A DNA stretch of 64,000 nt from Octopus sinensis (GCF_006345805.1 NC_043023.1:15438001-15502000), one strand, 5' to 3'. Positions 6,532-45,662 are shown, counted from the stretch's first letter. The notes: a model not told the origin generated them from the letters alone. Numbers and translations: made by a program.

Positions 6532-7740
6532 CTATGGTTTGTCCCCTGTATTAATGCATTTGTGTCTATTTAAGTACCTCTTCTGAGAGAATGATTTACC
6601 ACAGATATAGCACCGATATTGTTTCTCACCTGTATGAACTGATTTGTGAGAATCAAGGTAACTTTTTTGAGAGAATGACATTCCGCAGACATCACATTGA
6701 TGAGGTTTCTCTCCTGTATGAATATATTTATGAGAATCAAGGTTACTTTTTGAGAGAATGATTTTCCACAAATATCACACTGATATGGTTTCTCACCTGT
6801 ATGAATGTATTTATGAGAATCAAGGCTACTTTTTTGAGAGAATGACATTCCACAGACATCACATTGATGAGGTTTCTCTCCTGTATGAATGTATTTGTGA
6901 GTGGTAAGGCTACTTTTCTGAGAGAATGATTTACCTCAAATATCACACTGATTTGGTTTCTCTCCAGTATGAACAGATTTGTGATAAGTAAGACTACTCT
7001 TATGAGAGAATGATTTTCCACAAATATCACATCGATATGGTTTCTCTCCTGTATGAGTGGATTTGTGAGAAGAAAGGTGACTTTTTCGAGAGAATGATTT
7101 ACCACAGATATCACGGTGATAAGGTTTCTCCCCTGTATGAATGTATTTGAGAAGTCAGGTGAATTTTTCGAGAGAATGATTTTCCACAGATATCACAGTG
7201 ATAAGGTTTCTCTCCTGTATGAGTGGATATGTGTCTAGTAAGGTTGCTTTTATCAGAGAATGATTTACCACAAATATCACAGTGATAAGGTTTCTCTCCT
7301 GTATGAATGGATTTCTGAGAAGAAAGGTGACTTTTTCGAGAGAATGATTTTCCACAGATATCACAGTGATAAGGTTTCTCTCCTGTATGACTGGATATGT
7401 GTCTAGTAAGGTTATTTTTATCAGAGAATGATTTACCACAAATATCACAGTGATAAGGTTTCTCTCCTGTATGAATGTATTTGTGAGAAGTAAGGTGACT
7501 TTTTTGGGAGAATGACTTTCCACAGACATCACAGTGATATGGTTTCTCCCCTGTATGAATGGATATGTGAGAAGTAAGGCTGTGCTTCTGGGAGAATGAT
7601 TTACCACAGTGATATGGCTTCCTACCAGCATGAATGAATTTGTGAACAGTGAGATTTCGCTTATTAGAAAATGTCTTTTTACACATATCACATTGGTGTG
7701 ATAATTTTTCTTTTTCTTTTGTCATCTCTTGAGGATTCAT
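6532..7740 (-). pseudogene. Chimeric C2H2 ZNF (B-type head, A-type tail), ~14 fingers, two frameshifts
   Basis: Starts MNPQEMTK and ends [18 protein letters not shown]. There is a 2-nt deletion near 7150, a 1-nt loss in an A-run near 6750, and a 9-nt deletion removing a Cys in finger 2. Confidence 0.85.
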
Positions 7741-9270
7741 TATTGTTCTATAGTATACAAACACAAAATATAATTTTGCCTCCTTTTTTATATATTTCTA
7801 TTGCTTATATTTCCAGCAGTCCCGATCTTCATCAATATCTGAAGATGATACAAACACCTTTGCAGATATCTCCCGCTCCAAACAGAATGTGAAATACTTT
7901 AGCAAATATTCCAGGCAATGATGGAAACAAATGTTGCCATCAATTCAGAAGAAATATTTCACAGTTTTCCACCATAGACAAATCATATAAACAGAGTTAT
8001 GTCAAATATTTATAACTTCTTCCATTAGGTGATCAATATTCATGAAGTGTCACTAACATTTCACCTCCTGAAATGACACAGAAACAGAAGAAGATATAGG
8101 AAAAACTTAAAAAGCAGAGATTCAACTATTAAAAAAAATATAACTACATCTTCAAAATGATAAACTGTGGATAAAATCCTTCAATTTGTCTTTGTAATTT
8201 ATTTATGGTAATTTATAATATGGTAACCCTTTTGTTACCATATTTCTTTTGAGATTCAGTGTGTTTCTTTCAATTATTTTAAATATAATAAAGAATTTAG
8301 TAAACTTAGTTATCATTCAACTAGTGTTGGCAACATAAATTGTAACTAAGGTTTCGTGGAAGATTTTAATTCAAAACTTATGAAAACAAGACATTTTACC
8401 ACAGAGCCAGAGCCGGTTTGGGCCGGGTTAGTAACAAAAGGGTGTGGTCTTTGAAATTTATTTTATTAAAATTATATGATACAACCTTGTGTAATGTCTA
8501 CATATAGACGGACTTCAGTTCCTCTTCCTTCAGATATTATGTAAAACATTATCCCTTTAGTGTTCAGATTATTCTGTTAAATGTAATTCTTTTTCACTCA
8601 AATTGTTTTGAATTAATCATGCAATATCTTATAGCTTTTAGGTTTCAATGATGTGATTGTTTATTTCTAGAATGTCAATGTAGGTTAGTGTGAGGGGCCA
8701 GATACCGCCAGTTTGAATATAAAACATGCAGAATATCTGGGCCTGATATGGCCGGTTTTAAACAATAAAGGGTTCAACTATAGGATATTGGACAATAATA
8801 TGATAAGTGACTACTGTTTAACCCTAGGTATCCCTGACTGAGCAGATCTATTATTAATGAAATTAGGTAATGTTCATGATTGTTACAACTTCTGTAACAG
8901 ATCAAACATAAACATAAACTACAATTTAGTGAACCAACCCATCATGACTTTCCTCTGGTAACTTTATTAATAATAAAAACAAAACTGCACTCACATATGT
9001 TGAAGGTGTGGTCACTAATTTAGAGAAAGTGTTCTGTGAATTGACATATGAAGAGTAGAGCCAGGACAGAATGGCGATCCTTCGGTATAGGTACACACGT
9101 GACTTTGTTTACATTTCTGAAGATAACATAAACCCTTTTCTCCCACCCCCCACCCACATATAAAAAAACACCTTTTTGAAATGTATCCGGTACTTCCGGA
9201 TGTACACCGGTACTTATACCGTAAGATCGCCTTTCTTTTTAAAACAAAGTAAATAAAACACAAACGCATA

Positions 9271-9336
9271 GGTACTACTAGCGAAGACTGGACCCGGTAC
9301 GCGCTAGCTAGTCGTAAGTAGTCGATCCTACAACGA
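9271..9336 (+). mobile_element. Single terminus of a GGTACT-type (Merlin-like) MITE
   Basis: Near-identical to the left end of the two-ended copy at 21787-22401. Truncated at the palindrome junction. Confidence 0.6.
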
Positions 9337-43164: not shown

Positions 43165-43990
43165 CTAAAGGGATAATGTTTTACATAATATCTGAAGGAA
43201 GATGAACTGAAGTCCGTGTATATGTAGTCATTACACAAGGTTGTATCATATAATTTTAATAACAAAATAAATTTCAAAGACCACACCCTCTTGTTACTAA
43301 CCCGGCCAAAACGGGCTCTGGCTCTGTGGTAAAATGTCTTGTTTTCATAAGTTTTGAATTAAAATCTTCCACCAAACCTTAGTTACAATTTATGTTCCCA
43401 ACACTAGTTGAATGATAACTAAGTTAGTTTACTAAATTCTTTATTATATTTAAAATAATTGAAAGAAACACACTGAATCTCAGCAGAAATATGGTAACAA
43501 AAGGGTTACCATATTATAAATTACCATAAATAAATTTCAAAGACAAATTAAAGGATTTTATCCACAGTTTATCATTATGAAGATGTAGTTATATTTTTTT
43601 TTATAGTTGAATCTCTGCTTTTTAAGTTTTTCCTATATCTTCTTCTGTTTCTGTGTCATTTCAGGAGGTGAAATGTTAGTGATACTTCATGAATATTGAT
43701 CATCTAATGGAAGATGTTATAAATATTTGACATAACTCTGTTTATATGATTTGTCTATGGTGGAAAACTGTGAAATATTTCTTCTGAATTAATGGCAACA
43801 TTTGTTTCCATCATTGCCTGGAATATTTGCTAAAGTATTTCACATTATGTTTGGAGTGGAGATATCTGCAAAGGTGTTTGTATCATCTTCAGGTATTGAT
43901 GAAGATCGGAACTGCTGGAAATAACAGCAATAGAAACATATAAAAAAGGAAGCAAAATTATATTTTGTGTGTGTATACTATAGAACAATA

Positions 43991-45547
43991 ATGAATCCTC
44001 AAGAGATGACAAAAGAAAGAGAAAAATTATCACACCAATGTGATATCTGTAAAATGACTTTTTCTAATCAGGGAAATCTCACTGTTCACAAATTCATTCA
44101 TGCAGGTAGGAAGCCATATGACTGTGATGTCTGTGGTAAATCATTCTCTCAGAAAAGTAACCTTACCTCTCACAAATCCATTCATACAGGAGAGAAACCA
44201 TATGAATGTGATATTTGTTGTAAATCATTCTCTCAGAAAATTCACCTTACTAGACACAAATCCATTCACACAGGTGAGAAACCATATCAATGTGATATCT
44301 GTGGAAATTCATTCTCTGATAAATGTCACCTTTCTTCTCACAAATACATTCATACAGGTGAGAAACCATATCAATGTGATATTTGTGGTAAATCATTCTC
44401 CCATAAGCACATCCTTACTTCTCACATATCCATTCATACCGGAGTGAAACCTTATCACTGTGATATTTGTGGTAAATCATTCTCTCAAAGGACTGGCCTT
44501 TCTTATCACAAATCTGTTCATACTGGAGAGAAACCAAATCAGTGTGATATTTGTGGTAAATCATTCTCTCAGAAAAGTAGCCTTACCACTCACAAATACA
44601 TTCATACAGGAGAGAAACCTCATCAATGTGATGTCTGTGGAATGTCATTCTCTCAAAAAAGTAGCCTTGATTCTCATAAATACATTCATACAGGTGAGAA
44701 ACCATATCAGTGTGATATTTGTGGAAAATCATTCTCTCAAAAAAGTAACCTTGATTCTCATAAATATATTCATACAGGAGAGAAACCTCATCAATGTGAT
44801 GTCTGTGGAATGTCATTCTCTCAAAGACGTTACCTTGATTCTCACAAACATATTCATACAGGAGAGAAACCATATCAATGTGATATCTGTGGAAATTCAT
44901 TCTCTGATAAATGTCACCTTTCTTCTCACAAATACATTCACAGAGGTGAGAAACAATATCACTGTGATATTTGTGGTAAATCATTCTCCCATAAGCACAT
45001 CCTTACTTCTCACATATCCATTCATACAGGAGTGAAACCTTATAACTGTGATATTTGTGGTAAATCATTCTCTCAAAGGACTGGCCTTTCTTATCACAAA
45101 TCTGTTCATACTGGAGAGAAACCAAATCAGTGTGATATCTGTGGTAAATCATTCTCTCAGAAAAGTAGCCTTACCACTCACAAATACATTCATACAGGAG
45201 AGAAACCTCATCAATGTGATGTCTGTGGAATGTCATTCTCTCAAAAAAGTAGCCTTGATTCTCATAAATACATTCATACAGGTGAGAAACCATATCAGTG
45301 TGATATTTGTGGAAAATCATTCTCTCAAAAAGGTAACCTTGATTCTCATAAATATATTCATACAGGAGAGAAACCTCATCAATGTGATGTCTGTGGAATG
45401 TCATTCTCTCAAAGACGTTACCTTCATTCTCACAAACCCATTCATACAGGAGAGAAACCATATCAATGTGATATTTGTGGTAAATCGTTCTTCCATAAGC
45501 GTAGCCTTACTCATCACAAATCCATTCATACTGGAGAGAAACTATGA
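43991..45547 (+). CDS. B-type C2H2 ZNF, 518 aa, 18 fingers; last ancestral finger lost by a 2-nt deletion
   Basis: Intact ORF; acceptor at 43664. aaactatgag here versus aaactgtatgag in paralogues. Confidence 0.93.
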   Translation: MNPQEMTKEREKLSHQCDICKMTFSNQGNLTVHKFIHAGRKPYDCDVCGKSFSQKSNLTSHKSIHTGEKPYECDICCKSFSQKIHLTRHKSIHTGEKPYQCDICGNSFSDKCHLSSHKYIHTGEKPYQCDICGKSFSHKHILTSHISIHTGVKPYHCDICGKSFSQRTGLSYHKSVHTGEKPNQCDICGKSFSQKSSLTTHKYIHTGEKPHQCDVCGMSFSQKSSLDSHKYIHTGEKPYQCDICGKSFSQKSNLDSHKYIHTGEKPHQCDVCGMSFSQRRYLDSHKHIHTGEKPYQCDICGNSFSDKCHLSSHKYIHRGEKQYHCDICGKSFSHKHILTSHISIHTGVKPYNCDICGKSFSQRTGLSYHKSVHTGEKPNQCDICGKSFSQKSSLTTHKYIHTGEKPHQCDVCGMSFSQKSSLDSHKYIHTGEKPYQCDICGKSFSQKGNLDSHKYIHTGEKPHQCDVCGMSFSQRRYLHSHKPIHTGEKPYQCDICGKSFFHKRSLTHHKSIHTGEKL

Positions 45548-45662
45548 GTGTGATATTTGTGGTATACCACTGTCTTGCTTGCGTTCTTTAACCTCTCATA
45601 AAAACATTCATACAGGAGAGAAACCATAGAACTGTAATATCTGCAGTAAATCACTCTAAGCC

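What the first reader, a model, noticed from the sequence alone, without database searches (positions are those of the whole stretch)
6680..45630. The ZNF cluster is built as a ~39-kb imperfect mirror, with a third tandem copy of the spacer block
Reading 6.7 to 20.6 kb forward and 45.6 to 29.6 kb backward gives the same order: B-ZNF, B intron, GGTACT MITE end, promoter palindrome, A intron, A-ZNF, 3' tail, Gypsy relic, SINE S2, unique ~1 kb, SINE S1, MITE nest, Tc1 MITE, GGATC MITE, B-ZNF. Non-coding DNA is very similar between arms, while the matched finger arrays differ in number and recognition residues (25 vs 14+3 fingers; 17 vs 16). 45.63-51.11 kb is a third, direct copy of 30.99-35.74 kb. 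This suggests the cluster expands by fold-back inverted duplication rather than simple head-to-tail unequal crossing over, and that finger arrays turn over much faster than their flanks. The mechanism is inference.
Basis: partly seen in the sequence, partly recalled or inferred. Interest (0 to 1): 0.8.

Follow-up and report, generated by a model that had tools for sequence, protein, structure and literature searches.

The report
Mirror-arranged zinc-finger gene cluster duplications

Summary
6.2-20.7 kb aligns collinearly, in inverted orientation, with 45.6-29.0 kb (12.6 kb aligned). 45.66-51.12 kb is a third, direct copy of the spacer. The finger counts (25 vs 14+3; 17 vs 16) are right.

The picture is incomplete, though. 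The repeated thing is a 12-15 kb unit, B gene <- palindrome -> A gene, then a spacer. It occurs about 1.5 times head-to-tail in each orientation. Orientation switches three times, near 6.67 kb, at 21.9-29.5 kb and at 51.12 kb.

The left edge of the mirror is an in-register chimeric finger that joins a B-type 5' array to an A-type 3' array and tail. The 51.12 kb switch is a junction with 3-4 nt of microhomology.

Gene flanks are 96-98% identical among all copies, in a star-like pattern, so mirror partners are mostly not each other's closest relatives. Between mirror partners only 2 fingers per array reach flank-level identity.

Arrays therefore do turn over faster than flanks. They do so by unit gain, loss and amplification, plus replacement changes at the DNA-contact codons.

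A single fold-back event is not supported: the centre is about 8 kb and holds another pseudogene. The organism could not be verified. This is a new member of a known kind, of moderate to low interest.

The parts
1..545 (-). Upstream region of a further A-type gene lying beyond the left edge (L0); the last 81 bp (465-545) are the start of a palindrome arm
   Evidence: 98% identical to the reverse complement of 9735-10287 and to 39868-40405
546..4488 (.). 3.9-kb unrelated insert in the place where a B gene and spacer would be expected; contains a 371-aa ORF (3197-4312, minus strand) with a CCHC knuckle
   Evidence: Only weak 69-79% transposon-family matches; no Pfam hit; weak match to Gag nucleocapsid knuckles only
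4489..6670 (-). A-type 3' end of chimeric pseudogene H1: about 85 bp of spacer remnant, a 1.6-kb A tail, relic fingers and the last A-type fingers
   Evidence: 97-100% identical to A2, A6 and A9 in 100-bp windows; tail matrix 97.6-98.1%
6670..7692 (-). B-type 5' finger units of H1 (frameshifts and stops, so a pseudogene); the in-register crossover lies inside unit 13, in an 18-bp stretch shared by A and B arrays
   Evidence: Sharp identity switch at about 6680; alignment of the junction; unit list
7693..9330 (-). B upstream region ('B intron') of H1, with an acceptor-like TATAG 7 nt before the ATG
   Evidence: 96.0-97.2% identical to B2, B3 and B5; acceptor motif
9331..9822 (.). Short form of the intergenic palindrome (arms 9331-9511 and 9635-9822)
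   Evidence: Arms 93.6-97% complementary; ends identical to those of 40318-41901
9823..14554 (+). Gene A2: upstream region, ORF 10452-12596 (25 finger units, ten of them one amplified unit), relic fingers and 1.6-kb tail
14555..18430 (+). Spacer copy S1 (starts with a 380-bp dispersed repeat; ends with a 650-bp palindromic MITE next to B2)
   Evidence: Three-way alignment; inverted repeats
18433..21852 (-). Gene B2 (intact ORF 18461-19957, 17 fingers) and its upstream region, which stops 6 bp into the palindrome
21853..29061 (.). Centre of the mirror: transposon debris, B3 pseudogene (23075-25345, plus strand, upstream truncated to 674 bp), MITE and spacer-like fragments, unmatched DNA
29062..31009 (+). 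Gene B4 (ORF 29575-30987, 16 fingers); its 3' end is 94-100% like B2 but its upstream region only about 82% like other B genes
31020..35760 (-). Spacer copy S2
36027..40317 (-). Gene A6: tail, relic fingers, 14+3 fingers (ORF 38477-39703) and upstream region
40318..41901 (.). Long form of the intergenic palindrome (arms 40318-40955 and 41278-41901, 322-bp centre); its inner part belongs to a dispersed repeat family
   Evidence: 95.6% over 639 bp; arm segments 95-98%; diverged copies at 2083-2585, 22716-22948 and 26461-26903
41902..45657 (+). Gene B5: upstream region (with a private 443-bp MITE at 42725-43167) and 19 finger units containing a 7-unit internal duplication
45660..51117 (-). Spacer copy S3, a direct (head-to-tail) repeat of S2, longer by private insertions of 582 and 117 bp
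51115..52891 (+). A8: fragment of an A gene (mid-array to 690 bp of tail), joined to the end of S3 in the opposite orientation by a junction with 3-4 nt of microhomology
   Evidence: 88-89% identical to A2, A6, A9 and H1; tail 99.0% identical to A9; junction sequence
52887..57499 (+). Palindrome-arm fragment (52887-53233) and gene A9 (ORF 53653-55314, 19 units, relic fingers, tail); closest relative of A6

Best explanation
WHAT IT IS. The window holds a cluster of Krüppel-type C2H2 zinc-finger genes built from one 12-15 kb unit. The unit is a divergent pair: a B gene on one strand and an A gene on the other, with their 5' ends facing a palindromic intergenic element, followed by a spacer rich in transposon-like repeats. 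The A/B pair is itself an old inverted duplication, because the two upstream regions are 79% identical.

HOW IT IS ARRANGED. The unit was copied as blocks in a short burst, so flanks are 96-98% identical among all copies, star-like. It now lies about 1.5 times head-to-tail on the plus strand (6.7-21.9 kb) and about 1.5 times head-to-tail on the minus strand (29.5-51.1 kb). Further minus-oriented material lies at 1-6.7 kb and plus-oriented material at 51.1-57.5 kb.

HOW IT FORMED. At least three kinds of event are needed:
- a mirrored block duplication that paired H1 with B5 and B2 with B3;
- a head-to-tail duplication (S2/S3);
- breaks inside finger arrays.

Two junction types are shown directly. 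One is an in-register homologous exchange between a B array and an A array, at about 6670. The other is a microhomology join of a spacer end to the middle of an A array, at 51117.

I infer that the 84-bp finger arrays and the palindromes, present in both orientations every few kilobases, are the recombination or template-switch substrates that flip and copy the blocks. I also infer that the events were mostly non-reciprocal, because only one chimera type is present.

WHAT HAPPENED TO THE ARRAYS. After or during the burst the arrays were remodelled by unequal exchange of finger units (gain, loss, amplification) and by replacement changes at the DNA-contact positions, while the flanks drifted by 2-4%.
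For: - Module map and collinear chains in both orientations.
- An alternative, equally good pairing of 14555-21852 with the reverse complement of 41896-51108 shows head-to-tail periodicity inside each block.
- H1 is a chimera with a sharp switch at about 6680 and the crossover inside one finger.
- The 51117 junction has 3-4 nt of microhomology.
- Distances are star-like: A tails 97.5-98.1% for all ten pairs, B upstream regions 96.0-97.2%, with mostly private substitutions.
- Informative sites give (H1,B5)|(B2,B3) 5:0:0. S2+S3 share 7 indels, against 4 shared by S1+S3 and none by S1+S2.
- A upstream and B upstream are 79% identical over about 650 bp.
- Finger-unit alignments, private amplifications, and contact codons with 138 replacement and 5 silent differences against 266 and 210 elsewhere.
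- No N, and the longest exact repeat is 300 bp, so there is no sign of an artificially duplicated assembly.
- C2H2 identity is confirmed by Pfam.
Against: - The order of events cannot be resolved, because internal branches carry only 4-5 sites.
- Divergence is heterogeneous. The proximal spacer is 97-99% identical, the distal spacer 88-95%, and B4's upstream region about 82%. So either not everything belongs to one burst or gene conversion has homogenised some parts.
- A6 is closest to A9 and H1 to B5. These two inverted pairs interleave rather than nest, which no simple series of events explains.
- The central switch (21.9-29.5 kb) has no clean junction.
- Nothing here tests the assembly with reads, and the species and its relatives could not be compared.
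Confidence: 0.55

Rival explanations
1. Head-to-tail tandem duplication by unequal crossing over built the cluster. The orientation blocks arose later through inversions, by non-allelic homologous recombination between oppositely oriented finger arrays or palindrome arms. No inverted duplication step was involved.
For: - Each orientation block is itself about 1.5 head-to-tail units.
- Inverted homologous substrates (arrays 72-86% identical, palindrome arms 95-98%) occur every few kb.
- The B-5'/A-3' chimera at the block boundary is the product expected at one end of an inversion between an A and a B array.
- The nested sister pairs H1/B5 and B2/B3 fit this model as well as an inverted duplication.
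Against: - The reciprocal A-5'/B-3' chimera that a reciprocal inversion must leave is absent. Every other array in the window has matching 5' and 3' types.
- The 51117 junction is non-homologous.
- The central switch region carries an extra B pseudogene and unmatched DNA.
Confidence: 0.2
2. One reading: one fold-back inverted duplication created two 14-16 kb arms (6.7-20.6 kb and 45.6-29.6 kb). A later tandem duplication added the third spacer copy. All differences between arms arose afterwards.
For: - The collinear inverted chain covers 12.6 kb.
- H1 and B5 upstream regions are each other's closest relatives: 97.2%, with 5:0:0 informative sites when taken together with B2/B3.
- S2 and S3 are sister copies.
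Against: - The centre is about 8 kb and contains the B3 pseudogene and transposon debris, not a short spacer.
- Arm identity ranges from 99% to about 82%.
- For A tail, A upstream and spacer, the mirror partner is not the closest copy: A2 with H1 tail, A6 with A9, S1 with S3 no further than S1 with S2.
- B2 pairs with B3 or B5, not with its supposed partner B4.
- The left arm ends in a chimeric array, with a further inverted copy beyond it.
Confidence: 0.1
3. The inverted and repeated arrangement is partly an assembly artefact: mis-joins or mis-oriented contigs in a highly repetitive region.
For: - The region is full of 84-bp repeats and 96-98% identical kilobase segments, which are hard to assemble.
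- Two junctions (51117 and 52891) join unrelated modules abruptly.
- No read data could be consulted.
Against: - There are no gaps or N in 64 kb.
- Copies differ by 2-20% and by many private insertions, including a young MITE present in only one copy.
- The longest exact repeat is 300 bp, so copies are distinguishable by long reads and are not duplicated haplotigs.
Confidence: 0.05

Closest known systems
Mouse major urinary protein (Mup) class B cluster
   Same: The unit of amplification is a divergent head-to-head pair of paralogues. The array began with an inverted duplication of an ancestral pair and then grew by repeated duplication of the pair. Repeats at the breakpoints are the proposed recombination substrates (PMC2533699, read).
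   Different: In Mup the amplified pairs all lie in one orientation, with units of about 45 kb and more than 97% identity. Here the blocks alternate in orientation, the units are 12-15 kb, and the genes contain internal minisatellite-like arrays that themselves recombine.
Mammalian KRAB zinc-finger gene clusters
   Same: Lineage-specific growth by repeated segmental duplication. Paralogues diverge by changing the number of finger motifs and the DNA-contacting residues, with positive selection reported at the contact residues of recent paralogues (PMC3126818, read).
   Different: No KRAB or other effector domain was found in the finger exon here, and upstream exons are unknown. The head-to-head pairing around a palindrome and the alternating block orientation are not described as the rule for those clusters.
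Inverted triplications (DUP-TRP/INV-DUP in human genomic disorders; ODIRA in yeast)
   Same: A plus-minus-plus succession of copies. One junction is mediated by a pair of inverted repeats and another by microhomology, attributed to iterative template switches (abstracts of PMC11293582, 10.1101/2023.10.02.560172 and PMC10766183, listed). Here the blocks run plus (6.7-21.9 kb), minus (29.5-51.1 kb), plus (51.1-57.5 kb), with a homologous array junction and a microhomology junction.
   Different: The third block here is only a gene fragment plus one A gene, not a copy of the first block. The central switch is not a clean junction. The homologous chimera sits at the outer left edge, not between the first and second blocks. 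The events are old (2-10% divergence), so the signature is blurred.
Cephalopod C2H2 zinc-finger expansions
   Different: Those papers describe counts, phylogeny and expression. I found no analysis of unit structure or orientation in them. The species of this window could not be confirmed.
Large palindromes of sex chromosomes (own knowledge, not checked here)
   Same: Paired inverted arms carrying gene copies.
   Different: Those arms are more than 99.9% identical, maintained by arm-to-arm gene conversion around a short spacer. Here the arms are 79-98% identical with an 8-kb centre, and substitutions are mostly private to each copy.

Membership tests
Tandem C2H2 (Krüppel-type) zinc-finger genes | Arrays of 28-residue C-X2-C-X12-H-X3-H units joined by TGEKP-like linkers | tested here: met
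   Ten arrays and 145 intact units; Pfam zf-C2H2 and zf-H2C2_2 at E 1e-77 to 1e-133
Tandem C2H2 (Krüppel-type) zinc-finger genes | Highest variability at helix positions -1, 2, 3 and 6 | tested here: met
   Entropy is 2.6-3.0 bits at those four positions. Two non-contact positions also vary (2.1-2.5 bits); the other 22 are at or below 1.5 bits. Contact codons show 138 replacement and 5 silent differences
KRAB zinc-finger subfamily | KRAB (or SCAN) effector domain encoded upstream of the finger exon | tested here: inconclusive
   No such domain in the two finger-exon ORFs scanned, B2 and A9. The finger exon is preceded by an acceptor-like site, so upstream exons may exist and were not identified
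Fold-back inverted duplication | Two inverted arms joined directly or across a short spacer at a single junction | tested here: not met
   The arms are separated by about 8 kb (21853-29061) containing the B3 pseudogene and unrelated DNA
Fold-back inverted duplication | Arms are each other's closest relatives, with uniform divergence along their length | tested here: not met
   True only for the B upstream region (H1/B5). A tail, A upstream and spacer are closest to, or tied with, non-partner copies. Identity ranges from 99% to about 82%
Head-to-tail tandem duplication (unequal crossing over) | Same-orientation repeats of the whole unit with a constant period | tested here: met
   Spacer, then B upstream, then palindrome recur in direct order inside each block. 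The period is 14.6-15.4 kb on the right and about 12.2 kb on the left
Inverted triplication (DUP-TRP/INV-DUP, ODIRA) | Plus-minus-plus copies of the same segment; one junction in inverted repeats, one with microhomology | tested here: inconclusive
   The orientation pattern and both junction types are present, but the third block is not a copy of the first and the junctions are not in the predicted places
Reciprocal inversion by recombination between inverted arrays | Two reciprocal chimeric arrays at the two ends of the inverted segment | tested here: not met
   Only the B-5'/A-3' chimera (H1) exists. All other complete arrays have matching 5' and 3' types. The gene beyond the left edge could not be examined
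Arm-homogenised palindromes (sex-chromosome type) | Near-identity of arms through ongoing gene conversion | tested here: not met
   Mostly private substitutions in every copy (13-19 per 1.5 kb), and the longest exact match is 300 bp

The most novel reading that the evidence does not exclude
This zinc-finger family may expand by iterated, non-reciprocal template switches between oppositely oriented finger arrays and the palindromic intergenic element. Each round would add a block in the opposite orientation, producing the alternating minus, plus, minus, plus blocks and one-sided chimeric genes. That would be a germline, fixed counterpart of the inverted-triplication rearrangements known from human disease and yeast. 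In it the coding minisatellite, the finger array, would serve both as the evolving product and as the engine of cluster growth.
Probability: 0.2. Interest if true: 0.55.

Novelty: new member of a known kind. Interest (0 to 1): 0.3.

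Why it matters
The locus is a clean, gap-free example of how a large transcription-factor family grows and diversifies. Four kinds of event can be read directly from one 64-kb sequence: block duplications in both orientations, a chimeric gene formed by exchange within a finger, a microhomology junction, and arrays remodelled much faster than their surroundings.

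If the same unit and the same junction types recur across the rest of the cluster and in related species, two things could be measured. One is how much of the expansion comes from inverted copying and how much from head-to-tail copying. The other is whether the arrays themselves drive the rearrangements.

On its own it adds no new principle. Inverted duplication of head-to-head gene pairs, and fast turnover of finger arrays, are both documented elsewhere.

Tried and rejected
1. Identifying the organism. A protein homology search with the intact B2 ORF returned only vertebrate poly-zinc-finger proteins at 38-58% identity. Exact look-ups of six window ORFs, and a contig look-up of A9, found nothing.

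2. Transposon labels. The six-frame translation of 14555-16150 has no Pfam hit at E up to 1. There are no tRNA-like sequences and no Rfam family at gathering score. 'Gypsy relic' and 'SINE' are unverified. The MITE-like inverted repeats are real.

3. Ongoing gene conversion as the cause of flank similarity. I rejected this as the main cause, because substitutions are mostly private to each copy and the longest exact match is 300 bp. Older conversion cannot be excluded.

4. Reciprocal inversion between A and B arrays. The reciprocal chimera was looked for and not found.

5. H1's A-type tail as a local fold-back copy of the neighbouring A2. Identity is highest with A2 (98.1%), but informative sites are 4:1:0, which is not significant (about 0.14 by a simple multinomial). 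This stays open.

6. The near-equal distance of the chimeric junction and its A2 counterpart from the palindrome centre (2893 vs 2877 bp). The intervening sequences differ in content and the 16-bp difference is not in finger register, so I treat it as a coincidence.

7. Literature on unit orientation in cephalopod zinc-finger clusters. None was found. The 2015 octopus genome paper is not held.

Full report
WHAT IS IN THE WINDOW. The 64-kb window has 36% G+C and no N. It contains ten arrays of 84-bp C2H2 finger units. Pfam confirms them as zf-C2H2 and zf-H2C2_2 arrays.

Two gene types can be told apart by their flanks.
- A-type genes begin MNSLEML... and end at a stop codon. After the stop come five to seven decayed finger units and a 1.6-kb tail.
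- B-type genes begin ...IMNPQEM... and end with a ...SLSCLRSLTSHKNIHTGEKP finger. A 650-990-bp palindromic MITE-like element with GGATC-type ends follows directly.

Both types have an acceptor-like TATAG or TACAG 7 nt before the ATG of the finger exon.

My names for the copies are:
- H1, 4489-9330, minus strand
- A2, 9823-14554, plus
- B2, 18433-21852, minus
- B3, 23075-25345, plus
- B4, 29062-31009, plus
- A6, 36027-40317, minus
- B5, 41902-45657, plus
- A8, 51115-52891, plus, a fragment
- A9, 53234-57499, plus
- an array cut by the right edge

The upstream region of a further A gene lies at 1-545.

CHECK OF THE OBSERVATION. A self-comparison on both strands gives an inverted collinear chain from 6163-20754 to 45575-28996. 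It has ten HSPs and 12,560 aligned columns. Identities are 84% (B array plus upstream), 94% (upstream to palindrome), 86% (A array plus tail), 93%, 89%, 91%, 88% and 86% (spacer), 79% (inner B array), and 91% for a last 111-bp stretch of B upstream.

The direct third spacer copy is real. 31577-35736 matches 45916-51094 at 89-94%, or 94.4% when only substitutions are counted.

The transposon class names could not be supported. The inverted-repeat elements themselves exist. The species could not be checked.

First, the stretch 14555-21852 (spacer S1, B2, B upstream, first bases of the palindrome) aligns at 89.4% with the reverse complement of 41896-51108 (palindrome, B5, spacer S3). The repeated object is therefore a unit: B gene, palindrome, A gene, spacer. 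It occurs about 1.5 times head-to-tail on the plus strand (6.7-21.9 kb, period about 12 kb). It occurs about 1.5 times head-to-tail on the minus strand (29.5-51.1 kb, period 14.6-15.4 kb).

- From 9155 down to 7693, H1 is 95-97% identical to the upstream regions of B2, B3 and B5.
- From 7692 to about 6680 it is a B-type array, about 80% identical to everything.
- From about 6680 down to 4489 it is 97-100% identical to the last fingers and the tail of A2, A6 and A9.

The crossover lies inside one finger, in register, within an 18-bp stretch common to both arrays.

Third, the third spacer copy ends at 51117. There it abuts the middle of an A-type array in the opposite orientation, with 3-4 nt of microhomology. 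That A fragment stops 690 bp into its tail, against a palindrome-arm fragment that leads into A9.

Orientation therefore runs minus (1-6.67 kb), plus (to 21.85 kb), minus (29.5-51.1 kb), plus (51.1-57.5 kb).

Fourth, the centre of the mirror (21853-29061) is not a junction. It is about 7-8 kb of repeat debris plus the B3 pseudogene.

AGES AND RELATIONSHIPS. All figures in this section count substitutions only.
- The five A tails are 97.5-98.1% identical in all ten pairs, except A8-A9 at 99.0%.
- The B upstream regions of H1, B2, B3 and B5 are 96.0-97.2% identical.
- The A upstream regions are 95.3-98.4% identical.

Most differences are private to one copy, so the tree is star-like and suggests a burst.

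The few informative sites give (H1,B5)|(B2,B3) at 5:0:0, about 0.01 by chance. They give (H1 tail,A2)|(A6,A9) at 4:1:0, which is not significant.

The spacers give S2-S3 94.4%, S1-S3 93.5% and S1-S2 93.1%. S2 and S3 share seven indels. S1 and S3 share four, and S1 and S2 none.

Divergence along the arms is uneven. The proximal kilobase of the spacer is 97-99% identical in all three copies, while the distal part is 88-95%. B4's upstream region is only about 82% like the others over 450 bp and unrelated beyond that.

The B-upstream tree does support a mirrored block duplication, with H1 paired to B5 and B2 paired to B3, nested. For most other modules the mirror partner is not the closest copy. 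A6's closest relative is A9, and that pair interleaves with the H1/B5 pair.

ARRAYS VERSUS FLANKS. I cut every array into 84-bp units and aligned the units collinearly.
- Mirror partners share only two units at 96% or more per pair: H1-B5 2 of 12, A2-A6 2 of 15, B2-B4 2 of 15.
- The mean identity of aligned units is 83-87%. Even the best match anywhere in the partner array is usually 83-90%.
- The conserved units sit mainly at the array ends.
- Arrays carry private internal duplications: ten near-identical units in A2, a seven-unit block in B5, and two- and three-unit blocks in A6, A9 and B4.
- By contrast A6 and A9 share 8 of 13 aligned units at 96% or more, with a mean of 95.7%, close to their flank identity of 97.5%.

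Retained orthologous fingers therefore diverge about as fast as the flanks. The large array differences come from gain, loss, amplification and replacement of units.

There is also a clear mark of diversifying change. Amino-acid entropy peaks at helix positions -1, 2, 3 and 6. Among finger pairs differing by 1-6 nt, those four codons show 138 replacement and 5 silent differences, against 266 and 210 at all other codons. The pairs are not independent, so this is descriptive.

That is not met for the mirror pairs.

THE PALINDROME AND THE PAIR. The element between the two genes of a pair is a palindrome.
- In the right block its arms are 639 bp long (40318-40955 and 41278-41901), with 95.6% identity.
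- In the left block a centrally deleted form has arms of about 180 bp (9331-9822). Its ends are identical to those of the long form.
- Its inner part has diverged copies elsewhere in the window, so at least that part is a dispersed repeat.
- B2's upstream region stops 6 bp into it.

Beyond the palindrome, about 650 bp of the A-gene side (about 490 bp of upstream sequence plus the first two finger units) and the matching stretch of the B-gene side are 79% identical in mirror orientation. The head-to-head A/B pair is therefore itself an old inverted duplication. Whether the palindrome acts as a promoter cannot be tested here.

MECHANISM.

Shown directly:
- block copies in both orientations;
- head-to-tail periodicity within each block;
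- one in-register homologous junction between arrays;
- one microhomology junction;
- one-sided chimerism, with no reciprocal A-5'/B-3' gene among the complete arrays.

Inferred: the arrays and palindromes, present in both orientations every few kilobases, are the substrates for recombination or replication template switching that copies and flips blocks. The events were close in time.

I cannot separate an inverted duplication from a tandem duplication followed by an inversion, because the nested sister pairs fit both. The absence of the reciprocal chimera and the microhomology junction lean towards non-reciprocal, replication-type events. These resemble, loosely, the inverted triplications described in human and yeast. 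The fit is incomplete.

A single fold-back event is the least consistent with the 8-kb centre, the uneven arm divergence and the non-partner sister relations.

An assembly artefact is unlikely but untested. There are no gaps, the copies differ by 2-20% and by private insertions such as the 443-bp MITE found only in B5's upstream region, and the longest exact repeat is 300 bp.

COMPARISON WITH WHAT IS KNOWN. The closest documented case is the mouse Mup class B array. There an inverted duplication of a head-to-head pair was followed by repeated duplication of the pair, with repeats at the breakpoints (PMC2533699).

Fast change in finger number and in contact residues among recent paralogues, and growth by segmental duplication, are established for mammalian KRAB zinc-finger clusters (PMC3126818).

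Large tandem arrays of C2H2 genes are reported for coleoid cephalopods (PMC9068888; PMC12513265). I found no description there of unit structure or orientation.

The locus is thus a new member of a known kind.

VERDICT. Interest is moderate to low.

Noticed in passing
window 59823-62027: A 2.2-kb near-perfect palindrome. Its arms are 96-98% complementary, and the innermost arms (60836-60951 and 60960-61075) are only 8 nt apart. It carries the same MITE family as the spacers (33017-33507). This is the one place in the window that looks like a true fold-back structure or a Foldback-type element.
   Followed up: partly
window 546-4488 (ORF 3197-4312, minus strand): A 3.9-kb insert sits where a B gene and spacer would be expected. 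Its 371-aa acidic/basic ORF has a CCHC knuckle. It has no Pfam family and only weak matches (E about 0.1) to retroviral Gag nucleocapsid knuckles, so it may be a retroelement gag or ORF1 relic.
   Followed up: partly
window 42725-43167; empty sites at 8548-8560 and 20751-20763: A 443-bp MITE with 174-nt terminal inverted repeats, 99% complementary and flanked by TA. It is present only in the upstream region of B5 and absent at the same site in H1 and B2, so it was inserted after the duplications.
   Followed up: partly
window 12594-14554, 4575-6534, 36027-38234, 55291-57499, 51795-52891: Every A-type ORF ends at a stop codon, followed by five to seven decayed finger units and a 1.6-kb tail. 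This non-coding stretch is kept at 97.5-98.1% identity in five copies. That is as well conserved as, or better than, any other part of the unit.
   Followed up: partly
window 11586-12425: Ten consecutive near-identical finger units in A2 (CYMSSLDSH / CYTSTLDSH types), including a 282-bp exact repeat at an 84-bp offset. This is a recent amplification of one finger. It has no close counterpart (88% at most) among the arrays it was compared with (A6, A9 and H1).
   Followed up: partly
window 14781-15955 vs 34343-35543 vs 49703-50902: The kilobase of spacer nearest the A tail is 97-99% identical in all three copies, while the rest of the spacer is 88-95%. It has no ORF and no Pfam hit. Either it belongs to the A transcript or the two spacer halves have different histories.
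   Followed up: partly
window 19930-19935 (B2, minus strand): B2 has ATT where the three A copies compared (A2, A6, A9) and the other four B copies have the ATG that follows the acceptor-like site. Its long ORF is otherwise intact, and a downstream in-frame ATG exists.
   Followed up: no
window 1-545 and 62095-64000: The cluster continues beyond both edges. An A-gene upstream region points off the left end. A further array is cut by the right end, and its 3' flank (62095-62455) is only 80% like the A tails, so it is an older paralogue.
   Followed up: no
window 31273-31711: A 101-bp tandem repeat of 4.3 copies at 94% lies inside the palindromic element downstream of B4. It accounts for a 304-bp stretch private to spacer copy S2.
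   Followed up: no
window 6670 and 12450 relative to 9573: The chimeric junction in H1 and the matching point in A2 lie 2893 and 2877 bp from the centre of the intergenic palindrome, although the sequences in between differ in content. This is probably a coincidence.
   Followed up: no
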